A stretch of DNA of 64,000 nucleotides, from the IMG/VR virus record IMGVR_UViG_3300037294_000266, positions 124,001 to 188,000 of that record; one strand, given 5' to 3'. Shown one piece after another: positions 7,829-46,224 of the stretch. Within the stretch, counting starts at the first letter, position 1, and every line of letters begins with the position of its first letter. The notes beneath the pieces are model-generated. The model was given only the letters and a program-made list of their open reading frames with translations. It did not search any database and was not told where the DNA came from. Both the position numbers and the translations under genes were made by a program.

Positions 7829-7861
7829 TCTGTCAGTCAATAAATATAACCGAGACCTTGG

Positions 7862-8101: not shown

Positions 8102-8131
8102 ACGAACTCCCGTCCTTGGTTAATTGAGTGA

Positions 8132-8725
8132 TTACATGTTCATGATGGTGTCACGTTGCTGTTCTAACTGCTCGCCAAACACAGCCGAATACATCTCTGG
8201 ATACCGCGCATAACCGCTATGGCCAAACTTCTCTTTAAGGTGTTTGACCGACTCTTCCATACTCTGGTCGTCGGACATCTGAGGAAAGTGCTTCTTACGA
8301 TAAAGAATGGCTCTCGACAACATCTGACCTACATCACCCGGCAATTCACGATCTGCTGAGTTGATAAGCGCACTGAACCGTGATTTGAAATCGCCACGGA
8401 AAGATGCCCGGTGTTGATAACACGCCCAGGCCACTGCGTTCTGTTCGCTTGGATTGAGATTATCGATGATCAACGGATGATCAGTGCCTTGAATAAAATG
8501 AAGTGCCAATTCATGGTGATTAACGCGACTCCATGCAAACAGATCATGGAAGTAAGCAGAAAACATGATAAGTTTAGGATCAAACTCATTATTCAAATGT
8601 TCATTGATAACCATGCCACATTTGAATACGTTTTCAAAGTGTATTTGACGATGGGCTAAATCATTGCATTCCCACTTATCTTCAAATGCTGTAATGATCT
8701 GGTTGCGCAATACATTGATGTCCAT
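8132..8725 (-). CDS. HD-domain phosphohydrolase
   Basis: H...H (AHRQIHF), AYFHDL, later HH and H residues, and terminal D (SADRE); 197 aa. Confidence 0.85.
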   Translation of the reverse strand: MDINVLRNQIITAFEDKWECNDLAHRQIHFENVFKCGMVINEHLNNEFDPKLIMFSAYFHDLFAWSRVNHHELALHFIQGTDHPLIIDNLNPSEQNAVAWACYQHRASFRGDFKSRFSALINSADRELPGDVGQMLSRAILYRKKHFPQMSDDQSMEESVKHLKEKFGHSGYARYPEMYSAVFGEQLEQQRDTIMNM

Positions 8726-8754
8726 TATAATTCCTTGGTTATGGTTTACTCGTC

Positions 8755-8777
8755 ATTACAATGTACTGCCATGATAA
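8755..8777 (-). promoter_or_regulatory. Putative early promoter, 23-bp exact repeat of 45666-45688
   Basis: TTATCATGGCAGTACATTGTAAT on the minus strand, 30 nt upstream of the HD gene. Confidence 0.7.
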
Positions 8778-8786
8778 ACTCCAATC

Positions 8787-8818
8787 AAAAAAAGAACGGG
8801 GGCCGAAGCCCCTGTTCT
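8787..8818 (-). terminator. Rho-independent terminator
   Basis: GC-rich stem with a TTCG loop on the minus strand followed by a T7 tract. Confidence 0.75.
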
Positions 8819-8900: not shown

Positions 8901-9878
8901 TTATTCAACATCCCGATTTAGTTTCAACTTGTGGTGGTTTTCCAAAAGATCCGTTACCACGGAGTCTAATGACTTAATGATATCGCGTACCAACAATGGA
9001 TTACGATGCCAGTTGTATGCCGACGTGAATTTACCGTCTTCATGTACTTTGCTCACCGAGCAGAGTTTAAGGACACGTATTCCAGAATGGTGTCCCCAGT
9101 CCTGAACGGTGTCAAGACGCAAGCGATAGCCATTATCCATAATGACGTCGGCATAAGAATCGTAATTGTCGCCGTAATCATGGCCAGACAGTAGTTTGAT
9201 CAGTTCGTGGACAGGGTGGTCTTCGAGGACTTCTTTCTTGTTTTCGACAGTGCCGAAGAAATGATTCATGATCATGTATTTTTCATCAAACGGTTCGAGA
9301 TGCTCGTCTCCGACCATGGCATGATAGATACGGTTGAACACATTTTCTTCGACCCAAGTCTTGTCGATGAACATCTCGTACGGTTCTTCGAACATCTTAC
9401 ATTGCAGCAAACATTTAGACGACATGATGTTTTCGATGTCGATCGTGATGTCGCTGTCTACAAACGAGATACGGGCTCGTTTAGAATGAGAATCGAATGT
9501 AAGGCCCGCGTTTGGAAGACCGAGCTGAATGGAATTGACAGCAGACGGACGATTAGCCACCATGTAATCGCAGATGTCATTTAAAGGAATCATCGTGAGA
9601 GTAGGTGAGCCGTCTAACTGGTGGCTGATAATTCCTTCTGGGATGCGGAGTTGACGACCTGTAACCATTTCATAGACCTTAGCCCCCAATGTCTTGCCGT
9701 ACAGTATCTCATCACGAGACAGCGCCACTACCATGCGAATTATATTATCCACATTACAGGCAATGTTGGTCATGTATGGAGACATTGCTGGATATGCGTT
9801 TATGGCATTGCGGTCTGAAATAGCACAGAACAGTGTCTTGCATTGTTCGAGGAGTTCTTTTTCATTTGAAGGGGTCAT
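8901..9878 (-). CDS. Hypothetical protein
   Basis: 325 aa, AAGGA RBS, no recognisable motif. Confidence 0.8.
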   Translation of the reverse strand: MTPSNEKELLEQCKTLFCAISDRNAINAYPAMSPYMTNIACNVDNIIRMVVALSRDEILYGKTLGAKVYEMVTGRQLRIPEGIISHQLDGSPTLTMIPLNDICDYMVANRPSAVNSIQLGLPNAGLTFDSHSKRARISFVDSDITIDIENIMSSKCLLQCKMFEEPYEMFIDKTWVEENVFNRIYHAMVGDEHLEPFDEKYMIMNHFFGTVENKKEVLEDHPVHELIKLLSGHDYGDNYDSYADVIMDNGYRLRLDTVQDWGHHSGIRVLKLCSVSKVHEDGKFTSAYNWHRNPLLVRDIIKSLDSVVTDLLENHHKLKLNRDVE

Positions 9879-19126: not shown

Positions 19127-20626
19127 TTAAAAGTTATAACCAGTCATGGGTTTACCACGAACATCGACGATGCTGTCGTTGAACTCGTTCTTGGAAGAAC
19201 CAAACTCACCAACGATTTTTGCAATGGTCTCACCCATCGCCGTAACGTCGTCATTGTTGTTAGCAATGATTGGTGACACAAGTGAATCACAGAACACCGG
19301 GAAGACGAAGTCCGCTGGGTCTTCATCATCCAACTGCATGTCGATGTGAATGTCCACACCCAAGTCTGCCTTGATACGAAGATCATAACGGCAATCTTCC
19401 CATGGCAACATTTCGATGAACAGTTCTGTCTGAAGGCGTTGCTCCAGTGCAGACAATGCGCGTTCGTCGACTTTGTTACCAAGAAGCGGCAGGACGTTGG
19501 ACACCAGGATGATCGGCTGACCACCCAATGAGGTGTTGTTGGCTTCGAACTGGATGAACCCGATCTGGTGGAACGCCATGTAGCTAGGCAGGCCACGAGC
19601 CAGGATGTTTGCAGCGATGGTCGAGTTATCGCGACCACCCCAGCTCGAAGTGGAACGGAGATCGCGCTGAACATCTTGATCAAGGAAGTAGACCTTGACG
19701 TCATCCCAATGGAAATCAGGATTCAGCGCGGCCAGCTCACCGTAGGTGATGAACCCTTGTTCCAGGATGTTGGTTTCACGCGACAGTTCAGCAAGCGGAC
19801 GCCATGATACCAAGTTCTTTTCAGGGACTTGACGACGGGCATCGGTAATCACCTTGTTGGTGTCAATGTCCATGGCGTTGTAGTTTTCACCGTACTGCTC
19901 ACCATCGGTGGCTGTAGCCAGAGCGTTGATAGAGCGGTTCAGGTAACGGGTAGACGAGTCATTCCAACGAGTGGACATGCGCAGTTGCCGATCGGCGAAA
20001 CCGAAGCGACCGTCGATGAAGTTCTCGGTCGTGGCTTTACGTTCAAACGAACGCTGCATGACAGAAGAACCGCTCGAACGGAAGATGTCGCTAGGACGCA
20101 TGGTGACGGTGCCAGGCGCAGCACGTTCACGGGAGAAGTCCGGCATGGTCTGTGGAATGATCACGTGGTTGGAACTGCAGACACGAGTCTTCCAACCACC
20201 ACCGCCACGAACACCTGTGTTGTCGTACAACTGCTCGACTTCGGTAACCGAGTTAAAGTACAGAGCCATTTCGGATGGGAACTTAATCCCACGGAGGCCG
20301 TTATGGACTTCTGCGTTATCGGTATAGCCGGAGATTTCGAGCGTGGTGAAGACTGTGTTGGAACGACGGACTTCCACAGTCATGATAAACATGTAACGCT
20401 TCTCGTCCCAACCGTTGGCAATGATTGCTTTGCCACGCGATTCGGCTACAGGACGAATGATCCGCCCGGCAGTACCTGCCAGCGATGCTGGTGTCAGGTC
20501 AGTGCCTTGGTTGGTATCGTGACACAACTGATGAATAAGGTCGTCAGTTGCATCAGCACCGAATGGACGGAGTTGCATATCGCGATACGCAGGACGTTCA
20601 CGGAAAACGATATTGATGATCTTCAT
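19127..20626 (-). CDS. picA: Putative phage-nucleus protein import factor PicA/Imp1 (phiKZ gp69-like)
   Basis: 499 aa, directly downstream of and ATGA-coupled to the sigma-like subunit, the conserved PicA position. Assignment rests mainly on synteny and size. Confidence 0.68.
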   Translation of the reverse strand: MKIINIVFRERPAYRDMQLRPFGADATDDLIHQLCHDTNQGTDLTPASLAGTAGRIIRPVAESRGKAIIANGWDEKRYMFIMTVEVRRSNTVFTTLEISGYTDNAEVHNGLRGIKFPSEMALYFNSVTEVEQLYDNTGVRGGGGWKTRVCSSNHVIIPQTMPDFSRERAAPGTVTMRPSDIFRSSGSSVMQRSFERKATTENFIDGRFGFADRQLRMSTRWNDSSTRYLNRSINALATATDGEQYGENYNAMDIDTNKVITDARRQVPEKNLVSWRPLAELSRETNILEQGFITYGELAALNPDFHWDDVKVYFLDQDVQRDLRSTSSWGGRDNSTIAANILARGLPSYMAFHQIGFIQFEANNTSLGGQPIILVSNVLPLLGNKVDERALSALEQRLQTELFIEMLPWEDCRYDLRIKADLGVDIHIDMQLDDEDPADFVFPVFCDSLVSPIIANNNDDVTAMGETIAKIVGEFGSSKNEFNDSIVDVRGKPMTGYNF

Positions 20627-33021: not shown

Positions 33022-35307
33022 TTAATCCCAGTTAGCTTCTTCGCTGTCTTCGTCGATCATGTCATCGATTTCTTCATCGACTTGAATGAGCGAGTTAAAG
33101 TCCATAGCACCTGGTTGCAGATTCAGTTCACCTGGTGGCTCGTAGATATCACTTACCAACCGAACATACTTACTGTCAACTTGGAAGATACCTAGTGATT
33201 CAAGAATCATGTAAAACGATTCAAGGATCTCATAGGTCAGACGGCGAATGTTAATCATCGGCATTACTTCTTTAGGCATACCGATGCCTGACAGGATGGA
33301 CAGTGGAAGATATAGCGTCTTGATCATATCTCGACCAGACTTCTCCATGTAGTCCTTAAGGCGTTCTGCAAACTCAGGGTTCACCTTGGCCGATTCTGTC
33401 AGCCACATCTGCATGTCGGTCTTGTTATTGATCGACAGCGGCACCTTAATTACACTGAATGGCGGCGATTCCACATGGCCGTACGTCGGAGCAAAGACAG
33501 TCTCCCAGAAGTGATAATGACGATAGTTCGTCTTCTCACGATAAGGATCCTCTTTATTCATGTTCGGGTAGGCTTCCTGAATCTGTGCAGACTTCAGGTA
33601 TTTATGCTCACCTTTGGCAATCGACGTATAGATGTCTTGTTCGTGAATCCATGCCTTACGGTACAGTTCTTCAAGAGAGAACTGTTCATTACGGTCAGCA
33701 CGGTACATGACTTCTTTCATCATGGCCTTGGCCGACTTAATGATCGCCACAGGAACTGTAGACGACCGTAGAGCCACGCCTTTGATTTCCATGTCGTATT
33801 CACTGAACACGTTGCCTTCACGGCAGCTCATGAAAGCAAAGTAGTGTTTTGCACGACTGGTAAGCGTGAATACCGGAAACGCATATTCATTCTTCATGGT
33901 CAGGCGGTGTAGGTCTTCTTGAATCACACCCATGTTAGCTGACAGTTTAGCCAGCACGTGGATGATACATTGACAAGCGATATAAGTAGTGGTGTACCAG
34001 ATACCATCGCCTTCACGAGTCCGGTTCTGGTCGTGAGTGTACCACTCGACCCAGTCCTGCGTGGTAAAGATCGTAGAGTCGGTGTCAGACGCCAACACCA
34101 CACGGCGCAGTATGCCCTTGATATTCGCCACAGACGGACACAACTGACTAGGTGTCAGGAATGTACGGATGAACTCAAAGTGTTCCTGCATGACGCTCTG
34201 GATACGTACAGCAGTACGAGCGATCTTTACAAGGACATCGGTTTGACCTTTCTCAAGCATGGACTCGAAGTTCTCACCGCGAGCAATGTCTGCGTTTAGA
34301 TAGGTTGCCAAGATCTTGGTGTCTTCGTCAACCGCCTTCCCTTTAAGGAACGCAAACGGATCGTCGAACTGAGTGTCGTCAGTCGAAGGGTCGTACTTAA
34401 CGACCTTGTCCATAAACCCACGTACATACGCATCATTAAAACGAGCAATGTGGTAGAGATCGCCGGTATACACGACAATCGCTCGTTCCAACGGGGTCAT
34501 GTTTGTAATGAACTCAATGATCTGGGAGAACTTGGCTTCGTTTCTCCAGTACAGATCAGTAGACCGACGGATGCACTCGGTGGTCTGCTCAACAGTTGGA
34601 TAAACAAGGTTGCAGGATTCCATTGCATTCTCAAATGCAACGTGACACTGTCCTGTTACCAAAGCGGACATGTTCGCCACAGTGATCGTCGGTGAAGCAT
34701 AATGACGACTGCCTGCCAAAAGACGTTCGTTACTCGCATTACCATAGCCAGTAGCAGAACGGCACATTGAGGTCAGGCTGGAGTGACCTGATTTAACGAA
34801 TAGAATATTACCGGCAAAACCGTGCATGCCTGACAGCGAGTTGATCGCAATCTTCTTAGCATTCTGTTCAGCATCCTTGATCTTCTCAAGGACCTCATCG
34901 CCAGCAACCTTAGCAAAGAACATTTCATTCTTAGCTTTCTTACGGCCTGCAATGCCCGATTCCACAAACTTAGCGGACGGTGACTTCAACACCTTGGGGT
35001 TTTCGTAGCAGACCATGGAAGGCGACAGGATGCGGTTTGTATCTGTAACCGTACCAATATAATCCAGTAGGGACATCTCGTCACGTACGCGATTACCGGG
35101 GCTGTCCTGACGCAGTATGAACATGTTAGGGTCGGTAAGTGGGAACGCGCCAGTGCGAGACAGAGTCTTATTAAGGTACGCTCGTACGTTTTGCTCAGTC
35201 TGGGCTGTCATGCGCCGAAGGAAGTAGGCATTTTGCTCGTAGTAACCCTGCACTAGGTTAAGGTCACGAACATATTGGTCTTTAGGAAGTACGAATGGAT
35301 TTTCCAT
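33022..35307 (-). CDS. Family B DNA polymerase, catalytic (palm/fingers/thumb) part of a split enzyme (phiKZ gp50-like)
   Basis: KKIAINSLSG (motif B), SDTDS (motif C), KHYF, IKGVALRSS; no N-terminal exonuclease motifs seen. Confidence 0.9.
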   Translation of the reverse strand: MENPFVLPKDQYVRDLNLVQGYYEQNAYFLRRMTAQTEQNVRAYLNKTLSRTGAFPLTDPNMFILRQDSPGNRVRDEMSLLDYIGTVTDTNRILSPSMVCYENPKVLKSPSAKFVESGIAGRKKAKNEMFFAKVAGDEVLEKIKDAEQNAKKIAINSLSGMHGFAGNILFVKSGHSSLTSMCRSATGYGNASNERLLAGSRHYASPTITVANMSALVTGQCHVAFENAMESCNLVYPTVEQTTECIRRSTDLYWRNEAKFSQIIEFITNMTPLERAIVVYTGDLYHIARFNDAYVRGFMDKVVKYDPSTDDTQFDDPFAFLKGKAVDEDTKILATYLNADIARGENFESMLEKGQTDVLVKIARTAVRIQSVMQEHFEFIRTFLTPSQLCPSVANIKGILRRVVLASDTDSTIFTTQDWVEWYTHDQNRTREGDGIWYTTTYIACQCIIHVLAKLSANMGVIQEDLHRLTMKNEYAFPVFTLTSRAKHYFAFMSCREGNVFSEYDMEIKGVALRSSTVPVAIIKSAKAMMKEVMYRADRNEQFSLEELYRKAWIHEQDIYTSIAKGEHKYLKSAQIQEAYPNMNKEDPYREKTNYRHYHFWETVFAPTYGHVESPPFSVIKVPLSINNKTDMQMWLTESAKVNPEFAERLKDYMEKSGRDMIKTLYLPLSILSGIGMPKEVMPMINIRRLTYEILESFYMILESLGIFQVDSKYVRLVSDIYEPPGELNLQPGAMDFNSLIQVDEEIDDMIDEDSEEANWD

Positions 35308-35328: not shown

Positions 35329-35368
35329 CAAAAGAAAAAAGAAGTGGGAGCTCATAGTAGAGCTCCCA
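35329..35368 (-). terminator. Rho-independent terminator
   Basis: TGGGAGCTC stem plus a long T tract on the minus strand. Confidence 0.7.
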
Positions 35369-35383
35369 TTCGTTTTTATTGAA

Positions 35384-35890
35384 TCAATCATCGTAACAAC
35401 GGACGAACGTATAGATCATTGTGTCGTCTTCTCTGATCGGTGTGACCGATTCCAACATGATCCCGTCGTCGTGTCTCATGATCTGGGCCAGGTAAGCAAT
35501 TGCTGCCGGATGGTTACCATTGCAATGTATCTCGATAAGTTCTTCAAGAATATCTGAAGCGACTGCATCTGAGAACTCTGCGTAGATTTCATCCTGAATG
35601 AATTCTGTCTGACTAGTATCGCCGTACGACTCTTGAACCATCGTCGACACGATCGTAGTTAGATCGCAGATAGAAAACATTCTTGCTTGGGAGACATCGT
35701 CCAGGCCATGCTGCGTGACTATCTTATCAAGACGGTCTAACAGGTCACCAAAAGACACCATAAGAGCGTCGTCAAATGGGAGAAGGACATGATTGCTTTC
35801 TCCTCCCACAAAGCGCTGAGGTACCAGACTGCCCTTAGCTCGGTACTTCGGTCGATCCAATAGTTTCGATAATGAAGTTCGAGATCCCAT
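35384..35890 (-). CDS. Small alpha/beta array protein (start uncertain)
   Basis: Core from HVLLPFDD to DDTMIYTFV fits the array pattern; the true start may be nearer 35800. Confidence 0.6.
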   Translation of the reverse strand: MGSRTSLSKLLDRPKYRAKGSLVPQRFVGGESNHVLLPFDDALMVSFGDLLDRLDKIVTQHGLDDVSQARMFSICDLTTIVSTMVQESYGDTSQTEFIQDEIYAEFSDAVASDILEELIEIHCNGNHPAAIAYLAQIMRHDDGIMLESVTPIREDDTMIYTFVRCYDD

Positions 35891-36251
35891 TTTGAAGGAG
35901 CGCCTGTCTGACAAGCTGTTCAGTAGATTCACTGACATCGCTAACGGTTACAAAGAGCCGACGGCTGGTGATGACTTCGATAGACTCGTCGTCAATCCAA
36001 GGCACCCCAAGGATTTCTGTCTCACCATTGCCGTAACGGATTTTAACGTAACTGTACGCCCCAGCCGACTGCGGCAGTGACTGGATGTAGTTACGCACTT
36101 GGACGTGCTTGGAGCGAACGTCTGCTAAAACAGCCGCTGTTTCCAAGTCTAGGATGGCCACCACGGTCGCGTTCTCACGACCAGCCCCCAGAACACCAGG
36201 AGCCAGTGTGTTGAAACGCACGGTGCTGCCGTTGTAATCCGCAATACTCAT
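35835..36251 (-). CDS. Conserved phiKZ-like beta-rich (SH3-like) core protein
   Basis: 138 aa, GAGGA RBS, YSYVKIR...ILGVPWI motif, gp49 position upstream of the DNA polymerase. Confidence 0.7.
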   Translation of the reverse strand: MSIADYNGSTVRFNTLAPGVLGAGRENATVVAILDLETAAVLADVRSKHVQVRNYIQSLPQSAGAYSYVKIRYGNGETEILGVPWIDDESIEVITSRRLFVTVSDVSESTEQLVRQALLQNGISNFIIETIGSTEVPS

Positions 36252-36254
36252 GTC

Positions 36255-36554
36255 TTAATGTTCCTCGAAGATTAGGATGTAAGTGCCTTCGGTATCGATA
36301 ACTTCAATGTCGATCCAGCGCTTTTCTTGGACATTGGATAGAAATCGATCAGTCCTCAGCAAAACGAGCCAATCGTTATCGTAGTACTGGTCATTGTTAA
36401 GAACGTGGTAGAACGCATGCATGATCATATCACGCAGGTGTCTTCTCATCATTCGTGGCAAGTCAGTCTCTTCGAAAGGAACGTCGGGATCGAAAGCAAA
36501 GTAGACCTCAGGCAACAGTTCAGCAATCACTTGTGAAGTATTGATGACGATCAT
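36255..36554 (-). CDS. Small alpha/beta array protein
   Basis: 99 aa, GAGGA RBS; MIVINTS...EGTYILIF. Confidence 0.75.
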   Translation of the reverse strand: MIVINTSQVIAELLPEVYFAFDPDVPFEETDLPRMMRRHLRDMIMHAFYHVLNNDQYYDNDWLVLLRTDRFLSNVQEKRWIDIEVIDTEGTYILIFEEH

Positions 36555-36563
36555 GGGTTCCTC

Positions 36564-36926
36564 TTAACGCACCAAAACCATGATGTGGCCATCATCTGGA
36601 TTGCAGGCAGCATGTACTACGCCGCGCCTGTCTAGATGAGGTGTCATTTGATCAAGTGTGCAGTAAAGGTTTATCATAGCATTTCTCAATGCCACTTGGT
36701 TGTCCTCAGCTTCGTCTTGCTCTTCTTGGGCCGAGGTCGGATAGATCGGGTACATACGTTGGACATAGCTATCTACGAAAACTTCTCCACGGCGACACCA
36801 GTCAGCGTACATCATGAAGAGCTCGTCTACATGATAGTGGTGATCCATGACGCGACTGAGGTCATCCACGAACTGTTTGTACGCAACGACACCGTCCAGA
36901 AGGATGGTGGTTTCATTCATTGGCAA
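36564..36926 (-). CDS. Small alpha/beta array protein
   Basis: About 120 aa; TILLDG...DDGHIMVLV; start may be 36920. Confidence 0.75.
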   Translation of the reverse strand: MPMNETTILLDGVVAYKQFVDDLSRVMDHHYHVDELFMMYADWCRRGEVFVDSYVQRMYPIYPTSAQEEQDEAEDNQVALRNAMINLYCTLDQMTPHLDRRGVVHAACNPDDGHIMVLVR

Positions 36927-37245
36927 TTCTCACAACGATCGAGCCATCGACAGGGTCGAACACCAGTAAGTCCGTGATCAATTGATCTTCCGTGGAATAA
37001 ATACTGAGTTGTCTGGCGATGCCCGTGAATATAGGTACGACCGATTCGAATGCTTCTTCAACCTGCATCATTAGTCGGTCGCGTGACACACCTATATTAC
37101 TCTCTTGCTGTGTCCAGTACGAAAGTACCGCACCGTATTCGTAAGAAAGTCTATTCCACACGACTCCTCTCAAGACGTACGATATTACTGCCCTTAATAA
37201 GACGGGGGGTGTTTCTAACAGCGGCTTTGGGTCGAGCGAAAGCAT
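36913..37245 (-). CDS. Small alpha/beta array protein
   Basis: Probable start MLSLDPK; ends DGSIVVRI; overlaps the upstream gene by about 95 nt. Confidence 0.6.
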   Translation of the reverse strand: MLSLDPKPLLETPPVLLRAVISYVLRGVVWNRLSYEYGAVLSYWTQQESNIGVSRDRLMMQVEEAFESVVPIFTGIARQLSIYSTEDQLITDLLVFDPVDGSIVVRIANE

Positions 37246-37606
37246 CAGTGTTAGCGGGAGTAATCCGTTTCGATCTTGGTTCTTTAGGGGCAACCTCAAT
37301 GATGGCGGAATTATCAAGCTCATCGACCTTAATGAGTCTGAACTCTCCGATCTGTTCAGCGATACCGCTGGTTTCTTGATTGAGCTGTTCGATAAGGCCT
37401 CCCATGAGGCCAGTGATGGTCTGCGCCTCAGCATCAGGAAATCTCCCGTTAATCAATGGACTCTGTACAAACCGATCAAACTGATGTGCCACGGCCGCCT
37501 CGGCCAGATAAGCAAAAAGTTCTTCTAAGTTCATCCCCGTAGCTGCTAGTACGATTGCCACGTTCGAGAGGAACGTTCCACTCGCTTCCATATTTACTAT
37601 CACCAT
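37151..37606 (-). CDS. Small alpha/beta array protein (alternative starts 37726, 37591)
   Basis: MVIVNMEA...DNSAIIEV plus a basic tail. Confidence 0.65.
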   Translation of the reverse strand: MVIVNMEASGTFLSNVAIVLAATGMNLEELFAYLAEAAVAHQFDRFVQSPLINGRFPDAEAQTITGLMGGLIEQLNQETSGIAEQIGEFRLIKVDELDNSAIIEVAPKEPRSKRITPANTDAFARPKAAVRNTPRLIKGSNIVRLERSRVE

Positions 37607-37985
37607 CGTCCCTGGACGCTCCGATAAAGACGCTGTCGTCTGACCTGAAGTACGTGACAATAAGGAGCCTGTAGTGGCGTTGCCTAATATAGTCCGAACG
37701 TGATGTCGGTCCATTACTTGTTTCATAAAGCGTCCTCAGATCCTCGATCATCTGGTAATAGTTGGAGTAGAAGTCTTCCAACCACCACATTAATTCATCA
37801 GTAAGTTCTGGATAATTCTCCGAGAGATCTTCCAAGAAGTACGATTCGTCAAATACAAAGTATGCCAACGCGGCATAAAGAAGGGCGGAGGCGCCAATAC
37901 GATCAGCCAGTCCGTCGCCGAGCATATTGAACGCCGTCTCATAGACAAGATTCAAAGTTATTGAGAGTGTCGAATCGGATGACAC
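37476..37985 (-). CDS. Small alpha/beta array protein
   Basis: GTG start with GGAGG RBS; SITLNL...RLLIVTY; the tail overlaps the next gene. Confidence 0.65.
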   Translation of the reverse strand: MSSDSTLSITLNLVYETAFNMLGDGLADRIGASALLYAALAYFVFDESYFLEDLSENYPELTDELMWWLEDFYSNYYQMIEDLRTLYETSNGPTSRSDYIRQRHYRLLIVTYFRSDDSVFIGASRDDGDSKYGSEWNVPLERGNRTSSYGDELRRTFCLSGRGGRGTSV

Positions 37986-38283
37986 GACGTACCTCCACTA
38001 GCAGTGTGCCATCTACGTATTCAGACGCAAGGCATGAAAATCCAGGATATGCCAACAGTCTGCCAAACCCTTTTGATAATTCGGTATTGATGCGTTCAAT
38101 GTCAGGAGACTCATTGTCTCTGAAACGCCGTCCTGCGCGAGTAAACCTAACGTCAATACCATTGATGCCACAATTCACCATGTCTACCAATGACAACACA
38201 ATCCCGAAGCCTGTTAACCCTCGATGAAGTTCTTCGAACTGATCGTGTTCCATTGGAGAGATGATTATAGCGTATCTTACCAT
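37939..38283 (-). CDS. Small alpha/beta array protein
   Basis: Probable start MVRYAIII; ends DGTLLVEV. Confidence 0.65.
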   Translation of the reverse strand: MVRYAIIISPMEHDQFEELHRGLTGFGIVLSLVDMVNCGINGIDVRFTRAGRRFRDNESPDIERINTELSKGFGRLLAYPGFSCLASEYVDGTLLVEVRRVIRFDTLNNFESCL

Positions 38284-38326
38284 GTTTTCAGATACAGGCA
38301 CCGTCACTCGGGTAACTGTGTACTGA

Positions 38327-38767
38327 CTACATGCTAGAGCTAACTTCGTCGAATGCACGGCGTAGTCGCTCTGGATAGTAATCTCCTTGCTCAATCGCAT
38401 GGTGATATACCTCCATCAACACCTCAGCTGGATTCTGGGGTGGTCTGATCGTCTGTTTCACCACAACGGTGTTTTCAGCTGGCCAGTGTTCCAGAGTAAC
38501 AAGATGCTGAACAGGATCTGCATTCGATTCGATTAACCGAATGAACAGACGGGCGAATAACTCGGCGGTATCGTACTCATCAAACGTGTAATGAGGAGAA
38601 CCTATGATAGCATCGACAATGCCATCAGAGCCGGAGTGGTTATAGTGATCAACCATTCTTCCGACCATTGCTGCAGGGATATTGACGAAGCAGGAACCTA
38701 ACACTTCCGCAATGGAGGTTTCGATAACCTCCTCCAGACTGAGCACTGACACCAGTAATGGTACCAT
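38327..38767 (-). CDS. Small alpha/beta array protein
   Basis: Start MVPLLVSV with AAGGA RBS; ENTVVVK followed by a helical tail. Confidence 0.7.
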   Translation of the reverse strand: MVPLLVSVLSLEEVIETSIAEVLGSCFVNIPAAMVGRMVDHYNHSGSDGIVDAIIGSPHYTFDEYDTAELFARLFIRLIESNADPVQHLVTLEHWPAENTVVVKQTIRPPQNPAEVLMEVYHHAIEQGDYYPERLRRAFDEVSSSM

Positions 38768-38777
38768 GACACATTCC

Positions 38778-39392
38778 TTATTGGCGGTTGATAGTCTCGA
38801 TGAAGATTCGTTTGATCTCATCGCGCACAGCAGGACTGGACGACGAGTTGAATATTTCAGCAACGACTTCAGTGATATGTGATTCCACATCGTCAAGATC
38901 TGCAAGCTCACGTACTTTACGCAGTGGTTGGAGCTTACGGACCCGACCTAGAAGTTCTTTGTATCGAGCAAGGACAATGTCTTCGCCCAATTCGATAACC
39001 AGTTCTTCAGTGAGTTTGTCATGATAGATCTCGACTTTCTTGGAGCCGACGATTTCCATCAGTGGCACGGTCATCACGTCACAGATGACAACCATGTCAA
39101 GAAACATTTCATCAAGCTCTGTGCAGAGCTCATCGATCAGCGTACTGCCTTCACTGGTGACTTCGTCTTTATAACCAATGGCTATCAGGAAATCAGCCAT
39201 TGGATCAGGTTTCTTACGAAGGTAACGCAGGTTAACTCGGATGTAGCCTGAGACAAACTGGGCTACCGCCTCGACGATCATTTCAGTCCGCTTGGCAGAT
39301 TCTTTAGGCAGGTTATGGCCCGGCGGGAATTCGTGCGAAACATCTCGTACGTAACTCACAACTTCAGCAATGGGAAGGATTAACTTCTGCAC
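38778..39392 (-). CDS. Alpha/beta array protein with C-terminal helical extension
   Basis: GTG start with GGGAG RBS; QKLILPI...EELVIEL. Confidence 0.7.
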   Translation of the reverse strand: MQKLILPIAEVVSYVRDVSHEFPPGHNLPKESAKRTEMIVEAVAQFVSGYIRVNLRYLRKKPDPMADFLIAIGYKDEVTSEGSTLIDELCTELDEMFLDMVVICDVMTVPLMEIVGSKKVEIYHDKLTEELVIELGEDIVLARYKELLGRVRKLQPLRKVRELADLDDVESHITEVVAEIFNSSSSPAVRDEIKRIFIETINRQ

Positions 39393-39739
39393 ATGTGACT
39401 CCCTAGGCAATATTTTCTTTTGATGATGACCAGATCTTCTCTAGTCAGTGCTATCTCCACCACATACTCAGCTAGATGCTCTAAGATGTGTGGAGTCAGT
39501 CTATCAGCTATGCTTAACGAATACCGTTCCAAAAGCCCCTGGATTAACTTATACTGCTTAGTTAATGAAGGACATTTAGGAAAAGCACTTACCACGGTGA
39601 GACCCGCTTTTTCGACTAGCTCTCGTTCAATCACAAACTGCCATGCAAGAAGAGATAAAACATTTCCCTCATCGATGGCACTGGTCATGTAAGAAAGATC
39701 GAATATGAGCGCCTCAGGGCCCTTTAAATCGATATTCAT
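39380..39739 (-). CDS. Small alpha/beta array protein, first of the operon
   Basis: 119 aa; ALIFDL...EDLVIIK; GGGGG RBS. Confidence 0.65.
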   Translation of the reverse strand: MNIDLKGPEALIFDLSYMTSAIDEGNVLSLLAWQFVIERELVEKAGLTVVSAFPKCPSLTKQYKLIQGLLERYSLSIADRLTPHILEHLAEYVVEIALTREDLVIIKRKYCLGSHMCRS

Positions 39740-39794: not shown

Positions 39795-39833
39795 AAAAAA
39801 TAAGCACAGGAGACGGGACATCCCGTCTCCTGT
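39795..39833 (-). terminator. Rho-independent terminator
   Basis: 13-bp stem ACAGGAGACGGGA followed by a T tract on the minus strand. Confidence 0.75.
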
Positions 39834-39842
39834 ATTTGGGTG

Positions 39843-40049
39843 TTAACTGAAGCTGGCATTCATGCCACTTGGGTCTGGTTTATTCAATGCCGGACCATGG
39901 TAATCGAAGTTATAACGCTCTTCTGGGAATTGGTGGTGCCACTCACCATTTTTACAACGATGGCAGGTATAACCAACAGAAGTCTGCGGGGTGGCGTGGA
40001 TATTATCAACGTTGCCGCAAGACTCGCATTCAAAGACATCAGTACTCAT
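39843..40049 (-). CDS. Small zinc-ribbon protein
   Basis: 68 aa; CESC...CHRC then GEWH; ATGA coupled to the upstream gene. Confidence 0.75.
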   Translation of the reverse strand: MSTDVFECESCGNVDNIHATPQTSVGYTCHRCKNGEWHHQFPEERYNFDYHGPALNKPDPSGMNASFS

Positions 40050-40657: not shown

Positions 40658-40912
40658 CTAAGCTCCGTAATTCGCTGAAATAAGCACGCGGTGCTGGCCT
40701 GATTGAACAGGTTGGTCTGGATGTACGTCATGGTACTCGTAGATGCCGACTACACGGTTATCTTCGGTGACGTATGCATAGTCACAGCCAGGAAGCTGGC
40801 GGTTGGCATTGCACGCATCCAGGGCTTCAATGGTTGTCGGGTAGGGCGGACTGGTCTGCACCAGTCGCTTATCCGAATACTCCGCTACTTGAGGATCAGG
40901 TTGGTTACTCAT
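40658..40912 (-). CDS. Hypothetical protein
   Basis: Start moved to MSNQPD (GAGG RBS), overlapping the upstream stop. Confidence 0.6.
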   Translation of the reverse strand: MSNQPDPQVAEYSDKRLVQTSPPYPTTIEALDACNANRQLPGCDYAYVTEDNRVVGIYEYHDVHPDQPVQSGQHRVLISANYGA

Positions 40913-41123
40913 CACTACCTCGCGTATTCGTCTTGATGCGGATGACCACCTCTGACGAACTAATCTTGTTGCCTGTACTGGAGGTAGAGGTAACTTCAAT
41001 CACCGAGTCTGGATGGTCTTCAGAAAGGCGGTTGATAGCATTGGCTATATCTCGTGAAACCCCCCATGCAAACCCATTTGCCTCAAGTGTTTTCTCGACA
41101 CGGGTTTTCATATCGTCAGACAT
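40905..41123 (-). CDS. Hypothetical protein
   Basis: 72 aa, overlap-coupled on both sides. Confidence 0.65.
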   Translation of the reverse strand: MSDDMKTRVEKTLEANGFAWGVSRDIANAINRLSEDHPDSVIEVTSTSSTGNKISSSEVVIRIKTNTRGSDE

Positions 41124-42837: not shown

Positions 42838-43821
42838 TTACAGGAACAAGCCGGTGTCGCTTGCTTGCTCATTACCGTCCAAGAACGTGAAAGATTCAGC
42901 GCGGGTAGTGCGCTGCATTTCCATTTCTTTCTTCAGGCCATTCAGCTCACGGATTACTTCGCCGAACGAGATGTTCTCGATACCGAAGAAGTAACTGGTG
43001 GTTGCTTGAACGATCTGCGGCATGAAGCCATCGCAGCTGTACGGAACGAAGACGCTTGGTTGCAGATCATCTTGGTTACGCTTGAGATAAGCGGCTGAGA
43101 TTGGCTCTTTAACGATGTCGTCGAAATCTTCGATCGTGCCGGCCATATGCAGGCGTGCCAGGCACGGTGCAACGTCGGTCGTCTTGCTGAATTCCAGGAA
43201 GCTGGTGATGTCTGCAGTGTCGAGACCGTGGTTACGGCGTGAGCAGAGGACAGACATGGAACGAATGATCAGATGCGCTTCGACGTCGATCTTGGAGCGC
43301 GGGATGTTCGGCTTGTTCATGCCGAAGTGAATGACCACTGGTTTGTTGGTAGCACGGCTGATGCCATCGAGAGTCTTCATGGTGCCGATGGTATTCTCGG
43401 CAGTCTTGATGCTCTCATGCGAACCCGTCACAACACCAATAGTGCTGTGGCCGTCGGCCAGCAGTTGCTTCAGGATCAGTGGACCGGCTACAGAACCCGT
43501 ACCGCCCGAGGCAGTGAAGACCACGATGTTCAAGTCACCTGGGGTGAACTTGCGCAGGATGTCCGGGATAGCCTTGGCAATCACTTTGTCGTTAGCGCTG
43601 CGGATCTTGCCCGAACCATCAAGGTCTTTGAACAACCAGCAGTTGTCCACCAGACGATCGTCAAGGTTCGAATCAGAAGTGTCGATGAAAGCGACTTGGA
43701 TGTCCGCTACGTCGGCACTGTGCCCATCGGTCAGATACTCCTTACCGATGTTGATACCACCACCGCCGCACGCAAAAATTCTCACTTTGCCAGCAGGACG
43801 ATTGGAGAGACCATTACTCAT
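42838..43821 (-). CDS. phuZ: Phage tubulin PhuZ
   Basis: ACGGGGINIG, DTS, tubulin signature SGGTGS, acidic-hydrophobic C-tail SDTGLFL; start MSNGLS with GAGG RBS (327 aa). Confidence 0.95.
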   Translation of the reverse strand: MSNGLSNRPAGKVRIFACGGGGINIGKEYLTDGHSADVADIQVAFIDTSDSNLDDRLVDNCWLFKDLDGSGKIRSANDKVIAKAIPDILRKFTPGDLNIVVFTASGGTGSVAGPLILKQLLADGHSTIGVVTGSHESIKTAENTIGTMKTLDGISRATNKPVVIHFGMNKPNIPRSKIDVEAHLIIRSMSVLCSRRNHGLDTADITSFLEFSKTTDVAPCLARLHMAGTIEDFDDIVKEPISAAYLKRNQDDLQPSVFVPYSCDGFMPQIVQATTSYFFGIENISFGEVIRELNGLKKEMEMQRTTRAESFTFLDGNEQASDTGLFL

Positions 43822-43883
43822 TGGGTATTCCTCTTTACTTGGAGTGGGTGTTGATTTACGATGCGGTATACTCATCCACATGT

Positions 43884-43891
43884 ATAATGTA
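43884..43891 (-). promoter_or_regulatory. Putative early promoter core TACATTAT for phuZ
   Basis: 63 nt upstream of the phuZ start. Confidence 0.7.
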
Positions 43892-44117
43892 TCCTTACAG
43901 AATCTTCGGATAAGTAGCGTCTCTTTGAAGAACTTACCGTTTGCGGCAGTGTACATAAGAAACGCGCGATTATAAAGATGAGACCCATCATGTGTACCTT
44001 TATCACTTATAATTCAGTGCCTGCTCCAGCGACATGCCGCACTCGTTTAATCGCTTCCATAACTTCCTGTAAGGAATGTTGTACTGGAGCCCCTAATTTC
44101 ATAAGAGGTATCTTTAT

Positions 44118-44945
44118 ATGGACATCGTGACCATCGCTTTGGATCGAGTCAAATTCGAAATTCCGCAAGAGGTGTTGAGATACACTTTCTCGCCAACACG
44201 TTACGACCCATCTCGCAATGGTCTCGTTCGTGATTACAGTACGGGTGCCAGCAACGATACTGTCATTCGTCGCAAAGTTGTAGAAGGCCGTGTGCTGGTT
44301 GACATGGATCTTTGTTCTGGGGTGGAGATCTTCATTCCACTGATGGGTAATATCGAAATTGAACGGATTGACAACTGGACGTATGTCTACCGTATCTCTA
44401 AGGAACTGACTCAGGGTCGAAGTATCACAGAAGTCTACGGGCTTGCTTACGGCATGGGTAATCAGATGGGTGCTGTTGGAGCTACTTCCACTGACCGGTC
44501 TGACGTACTTGAATCGACCGCTGCGTTGATGGCGTCAAATCAATCGTGGACTCAGGTGCAGACTGCTCACGTTTCCCTGGTGGCTGACAACACTGTCATG
44601 GTTACCAACATGGCACGTGTGCCAGGGATTTCGTATCTTCGGTGCCTGGTGAGTCATGACCCTAACCTGAACAACATCCCTAAGGCGTACACTGACAAGT
44701 TTACTGAATTGGTGATTCTGGCCGTTAAGGCTTACATCTACAACTCAGCAATCATTCAGTTAGACGAAGGCGCTATTCGTGGCGGTGCTTCATTAGGCCG
44801 TATTCGCGAGATCGTTGATAGTTACGCTGACTCTAACACCATGTACAAAGAGTACTTACGTGACCAATGGCGTAAAGCAGGTCTGATGGCAAACAAAGAC
44901 CAACATCGCCGGTTCATGCGCTATACGGTGGGGAGTCGTCGCTGA
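44118..44945 (+). CDS. Conserved phiKZ-like virion structural protein (possible neck/head-tail connector)
   Basis: 275 aa, AGAGG RBS, late (+) strand. The C-terminal ILAVKAYIYN...G..IG..REIVDSY pattern is typical of the family. Confidence 0.6.
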   Translation: MDIVTIALDRVKFEIPQEVLRYTFSPTRYDPSRNGLVRDYSTGASNDTVIRRKVVEGRVLVDMDLCSGVEIFIPLMGNIEIERIDNWTYVYRISKELTQGRSITEVYGLAYGMGNQMGAVGATSTDRSDVLESTAALMASNQSWTQVQTAHVSLVADNTVMVTNMARVPGISYLRCLVSHDPNLNNIPKAYTDKFTELVILAVKAYIYNSAIIQLDEGAIRGGASLGRIREIVDSYADSNTMYKEYLRDQWRKAGLMANKDQHRRFMRYTVGSRR

Positions 44946-45738: not shown

Positions 45739-46224
45739 TTAGTCTTCAAGCCACGATTCGTCATCGAAGTATTTCTTCTGCAATGCGTACCACAGCAGCA
45801 GGTGGTTATCCTCATCGCGGACTGCATTGCGAAGTATCGCATCACTCATGACATCGAGACCTGCCAGCGATGCTGCCAACGTACGGACATAGTCCGCTGT
45901 CTCTTCTTCTTTGCAGATGTCCAAATATCCGTCAAGGATAGGTGCCACTTGACGATAGAGTTCTTCGATAACAAGACGACGATCGCGCGGGATGTCTTCC
46001 AGTACGAATACTTCAAGTTGCGCCACCAAGATCGTATCGACGCCGAATAGTTCTTCCAGCTTACTATACGTCTCTGGGTATGCAGCGCGTGCAAACTCCC
46101 CTTGGCGTTGTGCCAGGAAATGCATAGGTCGGTAGAGGTAGGACAGTTCTAACCATGGGTAGTCAACATGGCAGCGCTTTATTGCCTTGGCTACACTGAT
46201 GACGGCTTGATTTACAGTGGACAT
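45739..46224 (-). CDS. Hypothetical protein, possible outlying member of the alpha/beta array family
   Basis: 161 aa, GGGAG RBS; QAVISV...DEDNHLLLWY. Confidence 0.7.
   Translation of the reverse strand: MSTVNQAVISVAKAIKRCHVDYPWLELSYLYRPMHFLAQRQGEFARAAYPETYSKLEELFGVDTILVAQLEVFVLEDIPRDRRLVIEELYRQVAPILDGYLDICKEEETADYVRTLAASLAGLDVMSDAILRNAVRDEDNHLLLWYALQKKYFDDESWLED

What the first reader, a model, noticed from the sequence alone, without database searches (positions are those of the whole stretch)
35384..39739. Tandem array of about ten highly diverged small alpha/beta paralogs between DNA polymerase and PhuZ
Ten consecutive 100-205 aa acidic ORFs show no obvious pairwise identity, yet share one architecture. 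Each has an N-terminal hydrophobic strand ending in D/N/P/S (ALIFDL, KLILPI, LVSVLSL, AIIISP, ITLNL, VIVNM, LSLDP, ILLDG, IVINT, VLLPF), then a helical middle, then a C-terminal hairpin acidic-turn-hydrophobic strand (EDLVII, EELVIEL, ENTVVV, DGTLLVEV, RLLIVTY, DNSAIIEV, DGSIVVRI, DDGHIMVL, EGTYILIF, DDTMIYTF). The ORF at 45739-46224 shows the same pattern. This suggests serial duplication of one fold with fast-evolving surfaces, i.e. an adaptor repertoire. The array occupies the position just upstream of the gp49/gp50-like genes, where, as I recall, phiKZ genes affecting cargo-specific nuclear import (gp47/gp48) map. The hypothesis is a family of cargo-specificity adaptors for PicA-dependent import, or of host-protein binders.
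Basis: partly seen in the sequence, partly recalled or inferred. Interest (0 to 1): 0.72.

Follow-up and report, generated by a model that had tools for sequence, protein, structure and literature searches.

The report
Jumbo-phage operon holding import factor Imp4
The ten small acidic genes are real and form one conserved operon of nucleus-forming jumbo phages; its last small gene is a diverged counterpart of the phiKZ nuclear-import factor Imp4, but the ten genes are not shown to be copies of one ancestor.

Summary
The window is part of a 266.6-kb phiKZ-like (chimallivirus) genome. Bases 39739 to 35384 (minus strand) hold eleven tightly packed genes, not ten, bracketed by two strong intrinsic terminators. 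The eleventh (35835-36251) is an SH3DP domain protein, the phiKZ gp49 homologue.

All eleven have one-to-one syntenic orthologues in about 20 related phages at 24-70% identity, against 73-78% for the polymerase. No similarity between the ten was found by BLASTP, profile-profile comparison or iterated HMM searches.

AlphaFold2 models of the first and last small genes, g1 and g9, are confident. Both show the predicted layout: an N-terminal strand, four or five helices and a C-terminal hairpin. Neither matches PDB, AlphaFold DB or (g9 only) ESM Atlas. Both match only chimallivirus proteins, several of which map by length to the same arrays in other phages.

- g9 is the orthologue of phiKZ gp48 (Imp4), judged by position, fold and an iterated profile chain.
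- g2 plus g3 look like a split phiKZ gp43.
- g8 sits at the Imp2 position, but homology was not detected.

The adaptor idea is plausible by orthology for g9 and untested for the rest. Common descent is unproven.

The parts
39805..39834 (-). Intrinsic terminator between the zinc-ribbon gene (39843-40049) and g1. It marks the upstream boundary of the operon.
   Evidence: 13-bp stem with 8 GC pairs and a T-run. 12 terminator-like sites were found against 3.8 expected.
39380..39739 (-). g1, 119 aa, pI 5.9. Chimallivirus-only alpha/beta protein (strand, helices, hairpin).
   Evidence: Orthologues in 19 loci at 42-58% identity. AF2 pLDDT 82.5. BFVD hits: RP12 ORF013, Eowyn gene 74 and Noxifer gene 35, mapped by length. 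hhalign to family f22 gives 70%. No PDB or AFDB match.
38778..39392 (-). g2, 204 aa (GTG start). Resembles the N-terminal part of phiKZ gp43.
   Evidence: SD GGGAG lies upstream of the GTG. Orthologues at 24-39% identity. hhalign to the gp43 family gives 67% over 175 columns, matching gp43 positions 49-232.
38327..38767 (-). g3, 146 aa. Resembles the C-terminal part of phiKZ gp43 and carries the conserved GDYYPERLRRA motif.
   Evidence: Orthologues at 32-48% identity. hhalign gives 96.6% to family f45 and 24% to gp43 positions 288-335.
37939..38400 (-). g4, 153 aa. Overlaps the end of g3 by 74 nt. Has a conserved 40-aa N-terminal extension before the strand.
   Evidence: SD GGAGG. Frame-2 codon bias begins at about 38400. 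The N-terminus is conserved in orthologues.
37476..37985 (-). g5, 169 aa (GTG start). The last 30 aa or so are unconserved read-through overlapping g6.
   Evidence: hhalign to family f17 gives 69%.
37151..37606 (-). g6, 151 aa. Its start lies 131 nt inside g5.
   Evidence: The N-terminus VIVNMEASG/VIITLETSG is conserved. Codon bias switches frame near 37600.
36913..37245 (-). g7, about 110 aa. The start is uncertain; GTG 37161 would give 82 aa.
   Evidence: Orthologues at 30-65% identity.
36564..36920 (-). g8, 118 aa. Second-to-last small gene, at the position of phiKZ gp47 (Imp2).
   Evidence: Orthologues at 47-58% identity. The profile reaches second-to-last genes of two other clades, f13 and f63. 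No similarity to the Imp2 family f14.
36255..36554 (-). g9, 99 aa. Orthologue of phiKZ gp48 (Imp4), with an invariant DPDxP loop after helix 1.
   Evidence: AF2 pLDDT 89.9. BFVD: Ea35-70 gene 215 TM 0.62 and 201phi2-1 gp80 TM 0.51. Positional enrichment p 5.7e-7 and the profile chain to PhiPA3, gp80 and gp48. Synteny in L093.
35835..36251 (-). g10, 138 aa. SH3DP domain protein, homologue of phiKZ gp49.
   Evidence: Pfam PF20287 E 1e-23 and phrog_3235 E 4e-28. BLASTP to gp49 E 8e-11. Found in 63 loci.
35384..35890 (-). g11, 168 aa. Has a basic N-terminal tail followed by the same strand, helices, hairpin pattern. Lies between SH3DP and the polymerase and overlaps g10 by 56 nt.
   Evidence: The MASRxSRS N-terminus is conserved in 14 orthologues. 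No family match. RP12 ORF004, at the same position and mapped by length (148 aa), is a weak BFVD hit of g1 at TM 0.42.
35345..35368 (-). Intrinsic terminator between g11 and the DNA polymerase gene. It marks the downstream boundary of the operon.
   Evidence: 9-bp stem with 6 GC pairs and a T-run.
19127..20626 (-). PicA/Imp1 homologue, the proposed partner. It is not part of the array.
   Evidence: BLASTP to phiKZ gp69: 24% identity over 524 aa, E 1e-33.

Best explanation
Bases 39739 to 35384 (minus strand) are one terminator-bounded operon of eleven genes. It is the counterpart of the phiKZ block running from the unannotated ORF upstream of gp43 through gp49.

Shown:
- The genes are real and each is a single-copy orthologue.
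- The array is colinear across Chimalliviridae.
- g10 is SH3DP (phiKZ gp49).
- g9 belongs to the family of the gene that always sits directly upstream of SH3DP. That family includes 201phi2-1 gp80, the PhiPA3 gene and phiKZ gp48 (Imp4).
- g1 and g9 adopt a strand, helices, hairpin fold seen only in chimallivirus proteins.

Likely but weaker:
- g2 and g3 together correspond to phiKZ gp43.

Inferred:
- Like Imp4 (needed for import of host TopA) and Imp2 (needed for import of the recombinase Nlp1) in phiKZ, the small acidic proteins act as cargo-specific escorts. They would bind individual DNA-metabolism proteins and present them to PicA/Imp1 at the nuclear shell.
- Co-transcription with SH3DP next to the polymerase gene fits a role in supplying the replication compartment.
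- The array is an old, fixed set of fast-evolving genes rather than a recently expanding repertoire. Whether all members descend from one domain remains open.
For: - Gene reality and orthology.
- Operon boundaries. The same terminator layout is annotated in Goslar.
- Colinear arrays in distant clades, with profile links only between families that never co-occur: g1~f22 70%, g2~gp43 67%, g3~f45 96.6%, g5~f17 69%, g8~f13 81.5%.
- g9 to Imp4, structure: Foldseek TM 0.62 to Ea35-70 gene 215 and 0.51 to 201phi2-1 gp80.
- g9 to Imp4, sequence: 4 of the top 5 sub-threshold profile hits are last-position ORFs, p 5.7e-7. Restricted-search E-values are 1e-3 to 6e-3. Iterations stay position-specific and reach PhiPA3 (3.5e-13) and gp80 (3.6e-3). 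A phiKZ-clade profile hits gp48 at 1.2e-5. gp48 against gp80 gives E 1e-3.
- Fold specificity: no PDB, AFDB or ESM Atlas match for g9 and no PDB or AFDB match for g1, against chimallivirus-only BFVD hits.
- Function of Imp2 and Imp4: bioRxiv 10.1101/2024.03.27.586873 and 10.64898/2026.09.21.753271. No transposon insertions in orf47 or orf48: PMC12676376.
Against: - No experiment or prediction here links any of these proteins to PicA. The complex prediction gave no answer.
- Only two of eleven phiKZ-block genes have a published import phenotype.
- g8 shows no detectable homology to Imp2.
- The first step of the g9-Imp4 chain rests on weak E-values (1e-3 to 6e-3 in a search restricted to 59 ORFs) plus position. 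phiKZ gp48 itself is never hit directly by the g9-seeded profile (E 0.09 to 4 in the 59-ORF restricted search; E about 1 to 7 against all ORFs).
- Mapping of BFVD hits to genes is by protein length only.
- Co-transcription with SH3DP and adjacency to the polymerase fit a replication role equally well.
Confidence: 0.55

Rival explanations
1. All ten small genes are paralogues made by serial tandem duplication of one strand, helices, hairpin domain. Their surfaces have diverged beyond sequence recognition, giving a repertoire of adaptors.
For: - g1 and g9 have the same order of secondary-structure elements.
- They share BFVD neighbours: Goslar A0A482GG96, Eowyn gene 74 and PhiEaH1 W8CZW2.
- Both folds are absent from PDB and AFDB.
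- Tandem paralogues are detectable in relatives: two Imp4-like genes in L059 and L062 (E 7e-13 and 9e-10) and Noxifer genes 37 and 38 (E 1e-8).
- Noxifer gene 38 is a structural neighbour of g9 at TM 0.49.
Against: - No profile-profile signal exists between any two array families. The best is 8%, and the final Imp4-family profile gives E > 0.2 on every other array gene.
- Cross-class TM is only 0.26-0.48.
- DT01 orthologues of the other eight genes do not appear in the top 50 BFVD hits of g1 or g9.
- Eight members were never folded.
- Copy number is stable across the family.
- The sequence pattern is not distinctive against other small ORFs.
Confidence: 0.35
2. The proteins are accessory factors of the phage replisome or of nuclear DNA metabolism. 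They are co-expressed with SH3DP and the divergent polymerase, and the import phenotypes of Imp2 and Imp4 are indirect, for example cargo retained by binding inside the nucleus.
For: - The operon includes SH3DP, a domain defined by its association with phage DNA polymerases, and ends 76 nt upstream of the polymerase gene.
- The synteny array-SH3DP-divDNApol holds even in distant contigs.
- Imp2 itself is nuclear, and its cargo Nlp1 is a recombinase.
Against: - Imp2 and Imp4 were found in selections that score import. Escape mutants failed to import the EcoRI fusion.
- No DNA-binding or enzymatic domain was detected in any member.
Confidence: 0.25
3. The genes encode subunits of one hetero-oligomeric assembly. 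The edge strands of the small three-stranded sheets pair between subunits, which is why the set is inherited as a fixed, translationally coupled block.
For: - The gene set is fixed and colinear.
- Packing is tight, with overlaps of 8-131 nt that would couple translation.
- g2 and g3 appear fused into one protein (gp43) in the phiKZ and Noxifer lineages. Such fusion is often seen for interacting partners.
Against: - No complex prediction among array members was run.
- In phiKZ, Imp2 and Imp4 have different, cargo-specific phenotypes.
Confidence: 0.15
4. They are unrelated small acidic host-takeover or anti-defence proteins, for example DNA mimics or binders of host proteins. They merely share a common small alpha/beta appearance.
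For: - They are acidic, fast-evolving and without known domains.
- The sequence pattern is not statistically distinctive.
Against: - Accessory host-interaction genes are usually patchy. These are single-copy and colinear across phages of Pseudomonas, Erwinia, Klebsiella, Ralstonia and others.
- orf47 and orf48 tolerate no transposon insertions in phiKZ.
Confidence: 0.08

Closest known systems
phiKZ Imp4 (gp48/orf48), a cargo-specific nuclear import factor required for import of host TopA (Kokontis et al.; bioRxiv 10.1101/2024.03.27.586873)
   Same: g9 occupies the same slot, directly upstream of SH3DP (gp49) and the DNA polymerase. It has the same layout: an N-terminal strand, a [D/Y]PDxP-type loop and a C-terminal hairpin. 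It matches the Imp4 orthologue 201phi2-1 gp80 at TM 0.51 and is joined to the family by an iterated, position-specific profile chain.
   Different: It is 99 aa against 127 aa. There is no direct BLAST or HMM hit between g9 and gp48. No functional data exist. The published account describes Imp4 as conserved only in Pseudomonas phiKZ-like phages, whereas here the family appears at the same locus in many chimallivirus clades.
phiKZ Imp2 (gp47/orf47), required for import of Nlp1 and itself imported through Imp1
   Same: g8 is the second-to-last small gene before SH3DP, as gp47 is in phiKZ and gp79 in 201phi2-1. It has the same general sequence pattern.
   Different: It is 118 aa against 178 aa. 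hhalign probability is 0.2%, and the iterated g8 profile reaches families f13 and f63 but never the Imp2 family. Membership is not supported.
phiKZ gp43 (357 aa, function unknown) and its homologues such as Noxifer gp36
   Same: g2 aligns to the N-terminal two thirds and g3 to the C-terminal motif RGDYLP...R. The lengths sum to 350 aa, and the position after the first array gene is the same.
   Different: It is split into two genes here and in several other clades. The profile probabilities are moderate (67% and 24%).
Pseudomonas phage pPa_SNUABM_DT01 (MW735835), genes PA10_00134 to PA10_00142
   Same: This is the closest cultured relative, with polymerase 75% identical. Every array gene has an orthologue there in the same order.
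   Different: Array identities are only 32-63%. The deposited annotation omits the g5 and g7 orthologues.
SH3DP (Pfam PF20287) with divDNApol (PF20286), the polymerase-associated pair of jumbo phages
   Same: g10 is a full-length SH3DP, and the polymerase follows.
   Different: This lineage has an extra gene (g11) between SH3DP and the polymerase. phiKZ and L093 lack it.

Membership tests
Imp4 (phiKZ gp48) family, tested for g9 | Gene lies directly upstream of the SH3DP (gp49) gene and the DNA polymerase gene. | tested here: met
   g9 ends 3 nt before g10 (SH3DP). phiKZ gp48-gp49-gp50 and 201phi2-1 gp80-gp81-gp83 have the same order. A distant g9 homologue, P0021, has the same context.
Imp4 (phiKZ gp48) family, tested for g9 | Detectable sequence homology to gp48 or its accepted orthologues. 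| tested here: met
   Met only through a chain. g9 profile to L056, L083, L005 and Ea35-70 gene 215: E 1e-3 to 6e-3 in a 59-ORF search, positional enrichment p 5.7e-7. Then to L061, L077 and L067, then to PhiPA3 (3.5e-13) and gp80 (3.6e-3). A phiKZ-clade profile hits gp48 at 1.2e-5. gp48 against gp80 gives 1e-3. Direct g9 against gp48 gives no hit.
Imp4 (phiKZ gp48) family, tested for g9 | Same fold as an Imp4 orthologue. | tested here: met
   Foldseek g9 model against BFVD B3FK55 (128 aa, mapped by length to 201phi2-1 gp80): TM 0.51, probability 0.51. Against Ea35-70 W6ARH3 (mapped by length to gene 215): TM 0.62, probability 1.00. The value is borderline, and the BFVD models are predictions.
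Imp4 (phiKZ gp48) family, tested for g9 | Required for nuclear import of a specific cargo (TopA in phiKZ). | not testable with these tools
   Needs genetics or microscopy in an infected host.
Imp2 (phiKZ gp47) family, tested for g8 | Second-to-last small gene before SH3DP. | tested here: met
Imp2 (phiKZ gp47) family, tested for g8 | Sequence or profile homology to gp47 and its homologues (family f14, 18 members). | tested here: not met
   hhalign probability 0.2%. Two iterations of the g8 profile recruit f13 and f63 but no f14 member. tblastn of gp47 finds no hit in this clade.
   BLASTP all-against-all. hhalign on orthologue alignments gives at most 8%. The 62-family all-against-all gives no co-occurring pair above 47% and none involving window families above 17% (f5, the g3 family, against f39).
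   Met for g1 and g9. A Chou-Fasman profile was too inaccurate to use (Q3 0.52-0.55).
   No direct model-to-model tool was available. Indirectly, g9 against g1-type proteins gives TM 0.39-0.48, and g1 against PhiEaH1 W8D0F1 (a g9 neighbour at TM 0.51, position unchecked) gives 0.26.
   Seen in relatives only: L059 and L062 (two Imp4-like genes) and Noxifer genes 37 and 38. No duplicate pair is detectable in the window.
SH3DP (PF20287), tested for g10 | Full-length match above the Pfam gathering score, next to a divergent family-B polymerase. | tested here: met
   83.6 bits against a cut-off of 25, positions 3-121 of 122. The polymerase is at 33022-35307.
PicA/Imp1 (phiKZ gp69), tested for 19127-20626 | Full-length homology to gp69. 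| tested here: met
   BLASTP E 1e-33, 24% identity over 524 aa.
phiKZ gp43 family, tested for g2 plus g3 | Profile similarity covering the N-part (g2) and the C-part (g3) of gp43. | tested here: inconclusive
   g2: 67% probability over 175 columns. g3: 24% over 48 columns, including the GDY(Y/L)P motif. The length sum and position agree.

The most novel reading that the evidence does not exclude
The whole array is one ancient protein superfamily. In this reading, the first array gene, both halves of gp43, Imp2, Imp4 and the rest all descend from a single strand, helices, hairpin domain that exists only in nucleus-forming phages. Each member would be a dedicated escort delivering one replication, recombination or topology protein to PicA/Imp1. 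That would make a viral analogue of a family of nuclear-import adaptors, fixed in gene order since the origin of Chimalliviridae.
Probability: 0.2. Interest if true: 0.8.

Novelty: new member of a known kind. Interest (0 to 1): 0.58.

Why it matters
How the protein shell of the phage nucleus chooses its cargo is an open question. Imp2 and Imp4 have been treated as lineage-specific extras of Pseudomonas phiKZ-like phages. The analysis here points to three things.

- Imp4 is a fast-evolving but family-wide gene held at one fixed locus.
- It belongs to a terminator-bounded operon that is colinear across Chimalliviridae.
- At least two of the operon's products have a fold found nowhere outside these phages.

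This gives a defined list of about ten candidates per phage for cargo-specific import factors. It also gives a cultured relative (DT01, on Pseudomonas aeruginosa) in which they can be tested. If the candidates hold up, import selectivity would be a conserved, modular property of the family rather than a phiKZ peculiarity.

Tried and rejected
- Pfam and PHROGs scans of all array genes found nothing except SH3DP.
- Megablast of the region against GenBank phages found no match.
- ESM-Atlas look-alike search for g3 gave scores of 0.80 or less, at chance level, and no model.
- The word-indexed protein search for g9 found only six close relatives.
- A Chou-Fasman secondary-structure profile on the orthologue alignments reached Q3 of 0.52-0.55 against the two AF2 models. 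It was too poor to judge the other eight genes and was discarded.
- Beta-propensity statistics against 136 other small ORFs of the genome were not significant.
- Complex prediction of PicA with g9 gave 'no answer', because PicA folded at pLDDT 26 without an alignment. This is not evidence either way.
- Iterated profile searches seeded with g1, g4, g5, g6 and g7 found no significant distant hits.
- The core-genome paper (PMC10299810) and its supplements did not mention the phiKZ gene names or accessions I searched. The Nature version of the Imp paper is not held.
- The first all-against-all hhalign runs timed out and were re-run in batches.
- The idea that long ORF overlaps were artefacts of wrong starts was rejected for g3/g4 and g10/g11, where both overlapping peptides are conserved.

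Full report
**Source and context.** The window is bases 124001-188000 of a 266,646-bp IMG/VR virus record rated complete. It encodes these hallmarks:
- a PhuZ tubulin (42838-43956, minus strand);
- a divergent family-B DNA polymerase (33022-35307, minus strand);
- a PicA/Imp1 homologue (19127-20626; E 1e-33 against phiKZ gp69).

It is therefore a nucleus-forming jumbo phage (chimallivirus). The closest cultured relative is Pseudomonas phage pPa_SNUABM_DT01, with polymerase 75% identical. The array region itself has no megablast match in GenBank phages.

**Checking the observation: gene calls.** The mechanical ORF list overlaps heavily. I re-called the genes using Shine-Dalgarno context, a codon-bias profile trained on 117 long ORFs of the same genome, and orthologue alignments. 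The result is eleven minus-strand genes:

| Gene | Coordinates | Length | Note |
|---|---|---|---|
| g1 | 39380-39739 | 119 aa | |
| g2 | 38778-39392 | 204 aa | GTG start |
| g3 | 38327-38767 | 146 aa | |
| g4 | 37939-38400 | 153 aa | |
| g5 | 37476-37985 | 169 aa | GTG start |
| g6 | 37151-37606 | 151 aa | |
| g7 | 36913-37245 | about 110 aa | start uncertain |
| g8 | 36564-36920 | 118 aa | |
| g9 | 36255-36554 | 99 aa | |
| g10 | 35835-36251 | 138 aa | SH3DP |
| g11 | 35384-35890 | 168 aa | |

- All are acidic, pI 4.4-5.9.
- Neighbouring genes overlap by 8-131 nt. For g3/g4 and g10/g11 both overlapping peptides are conserved, so the overlaps are real.
- Two strong intrinsic terminators on the minus strand, at 39834-39805 and 35368-35345, bracket exactly g1 to g11. 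The block is most simply one operon. Goslar's deposited annotation shows the same terminator placement.

**Is the shared pattern more than chance?** On sequence alone, no. Beta-propensity scores for an N-terminal strand and a C-terminal hairpin do not separate the array genes from 136 other 90-215-aa ORFs of this genome (p about 0.1). Only net acidity does (p 0.023).

**The genes are real and old.**
- A pattern search seeded with the polymerase fetched 80 chimallivirus loci carrying up to 10 kb upstream.
- Every array gene has a syntenic one-to-one orthologue in about 20 loci of the same clade, at 24-65% identity. The comparison values are 73-78% for the polymerase, 51-79% for PhuZ and 57-70% for SH3DP.
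- I clustered the upstream ORFs of 79 loci into 82 families and compared 62 of them all-against-all with hhalign.
- Every link above 65% probability joins families that never occur in the same locus and sit at similar distances from SH3DP. These are cross-clade orthologues: g1~f22 (70%), g2~phiKZ gp43 family (67%, 175 columns), g3~f45 (96.6%), g5~f17 (69%) and g8~f13 (81.5%).
- The arrays are colinear across clades. phiKZ has six genes between gp43 and gp49, and this phage has six between g3 and g10.
- g3 also aligns to the C-terminal GDY(Y/L)P motif of gp43. Together with the length sum (204 + 146 against 357 aa), this suggests that g2 and g3 are a split form of gp43.

**Structures.**
- Only two prediction jobs were allowed, so I folded the last and the first small gene.
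- g9: pLDDT 89.9, pTM 0.84, elements E2-6, H8-21, H34-47, H60-66, H70-74, E79-85, E91-97.
- g1: pLDDT 82.5, pTM 0.74, elements E10-14, five helices with one short extra strand, E92-98, E102-110.

**Structural neighbours in BFVD.**
- After the DT01 orthologue (TM 0.93 for g9, 0.84 for g1), most of the named hits are small proteins of nucleus-forming jumbo phages.
- By protein length, these hits map into the PhuZ-polymerase arrays of their genomes:
  - Ea35-70 W6ARH3 is gene 215, directly upstream of SH3DP.
  - 201phi2-1 B3FK55 is gp80, between the gp47 homologue and the gp49 homologue.
  - The two Eowyn hits are genes 74 and 76.
  - The three Noxifer hits are genes 35, 36 and 38.
  - The two RP12 hits are ORF013, the first gene after PhuZ, and ORF004, between SH3DP and the polymerase like g11.
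- The two queries share several targets, but cross-class scores are modest. g9 against g1-type proteins gives TM 0.39-0.48. g1 against PhiEaH1 W8D0F1, a g9 neighbour at TM 0.51 whose genomic position I did not check, gives about 0.26.
- I could not superpose my two models directly.
- Taken together, the folds have the same topology and are both chimallivirus-only, but a common fold is not demonstrated.

**g9 is an Imp4 orthologue.**
- phiKZ orf47 and orf48 are Imp2 and Imp4, cargo-specific import factors for Nlp1 and for host TopA. They are still described as cargo-specific adaptors in 2026, and they lack transposon insertions.
- The ORFs directly upstream of SH3DP in many clades share three features: an N-terminal strand, a [D/Y/F]PDx[P/E] loop (invariant DPDxP in the g9 family) and a C-terminal hairpin with a D/N-x-x-G turn.
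- A full HMMER search of 1.84 billion representatives with the g9 alignment found 20 clusters.
- The enlarged profile was searched against 3123 ORFs of the distant loci. It placed last-position ORFs at 4 of its top 5 and 11 of its top 39 sub-threshold hits (hypergeometric p 5.7e-7 and 4.6e-11).
- In an a priori search of the 59 last-position ORFs, four clades scored E 1e-3 to 6e-3.
- Iterating kept every significant hit at the last position, or at its tandem duplicate. The iterations reached PhiPA3 (3.5e-13) and 201phi2-1 gp80 (3.6e-3 before inclusion).
- A profile of the phiKZ-like clade hits phiKZ gp48 at 1.2e-5. gp48 against gp80 gives E 1e-3.
- A distant g9 homologue, P0021, lies after eight or nine small genes and directly before SH3DP and divDNApol.
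- The final profile does not recognise any other array gene of the window (E > 0.2).
- The same procedure for g8 reached second-to-last genes of two other clades but never the Imp2 family. Seeds from g1, g4, g5, g6 and g7 found nothing.

**Duplication.** No paralogue pair is detectable in the window. In other chimalliviruses, tandem paralogues exist in this array:
- L059 and L062 each carry two adjacent Imp4-like genes (E 7e-13 and 9e-10).
- Noxifer-like phages carry genes 37 and 38 (E 1e-8 to 1e-13).

Duplication does operate at this locus, so a common origin for more members is possible.

**Mechanism.** Three things are shown: a conserved operon, Imp4 orthology for g9, and SH3DP identity for g10. 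The rest is inferred. The small acidic proteins would act like Imp2 and Imp4, as escorts that bind individual DNA-metabolism proteins and present them to PicA/Imp1. The single complex prediction I could run (PicA plus g9) returned 'no answer', because PicA folded at pLDDT 26 without an alignment. Three rivals are not excluded: replisome accessory factors, subunits of one complex, and host-protein binders.

**Verdict.** The claims of 'serial duplication of one fold' and 'adaptor repertoire' remain unproven for eight of the ten genes. The finding is a new member of a known kind. It adds the point that Imp4 and its operon are family-wide rather than specific to Pseudomonas phages.

Noticed in passing
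window 39843-40049 (-): A 68-aa protein with two CxxC pairs (a zinc-ribbon look; only weak Pfam hints). It is conserved upstream of the array in 36 loci, including distant clades, and is followed by the strongest terminator in the region.
   Followed up: partly
window 37476-38400 and 35835-35890 (-): Unusually long gene overlaps that are conserved: g3/g4 74 nt, g4/g5 47 nt, g5/g6 131 nt, g6/g7 95 nt and g10/g11 56 nt. For g3/g4 and g10/g11 both reading frames are conserved at the protein level, so the sequence is dual-coding.
   Followed up: partly
L007 (DT01, MW735835) 8327-8797 and 9115-9396: The deposited DT01 annotation has no CDS for the orthologues of g5 and g7. The stretches appear as unannotated gaps or are covered by an over-long neighbouring call.
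   Followed up: partly
L008 (phiKZ NC_004629) 7858-8328, which is record 35857-36327 (+): An ORF that is unannotated in the RefSeq record lies between gp42 and gp43. It belongs to a 17-member family that includes the annotated Noxifer gene 35, which is a structural neighbour of g1. It would be the phiKZ counterpart of g1.
   Followed up: partly
L059 8111-9020 and L062 8113-9028; L086 (Noxifer) 6733-7604: Tandem paralogue pairs occur inside the array of other chimalliviruses: two Imp4-like genes in L059 and L062, and Noxifer genes 37 and 38.
   Followed up: yes
window 44118-44942 (+): A 275-aa protein on the opposite strand just beyond PhuZ is a full-length DUF7484 (PF24302, E 1e-83; phrog_3179). 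The same divergent gene sits beside PhuZ in DT01, Ea35-70, Eowyn, Goslar and RP12.
   Followed up: no
window 35384-35890 (-) against L008, L093: g11, the gene between SH3DP and the polymerase, is present in this clade. RP12 has a gene at that position, but phiKZ and the L093 clade do not, so the slot is lineage-variable. g11 carries a conserved basic N-terminal tail (MASRxSRS...), unlike the other members.
   Followed up: partly
window 42838-43956 (-): The mechanical PhuZ ORF is 372 aa, but homology to other PhuZ proteins starts at about residue 25-36. The real start is probably an internal ATG.
   Followed up: no
window 40658-40999 (-): A 113-aa ORF matches phrog_6898 (E 8e-22) over residues 39-108 only. 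It is found in a subset of related loci. Its mechanical start overlaps the next gene, so the real protein is probably about 75 aa.
   Followed up: no
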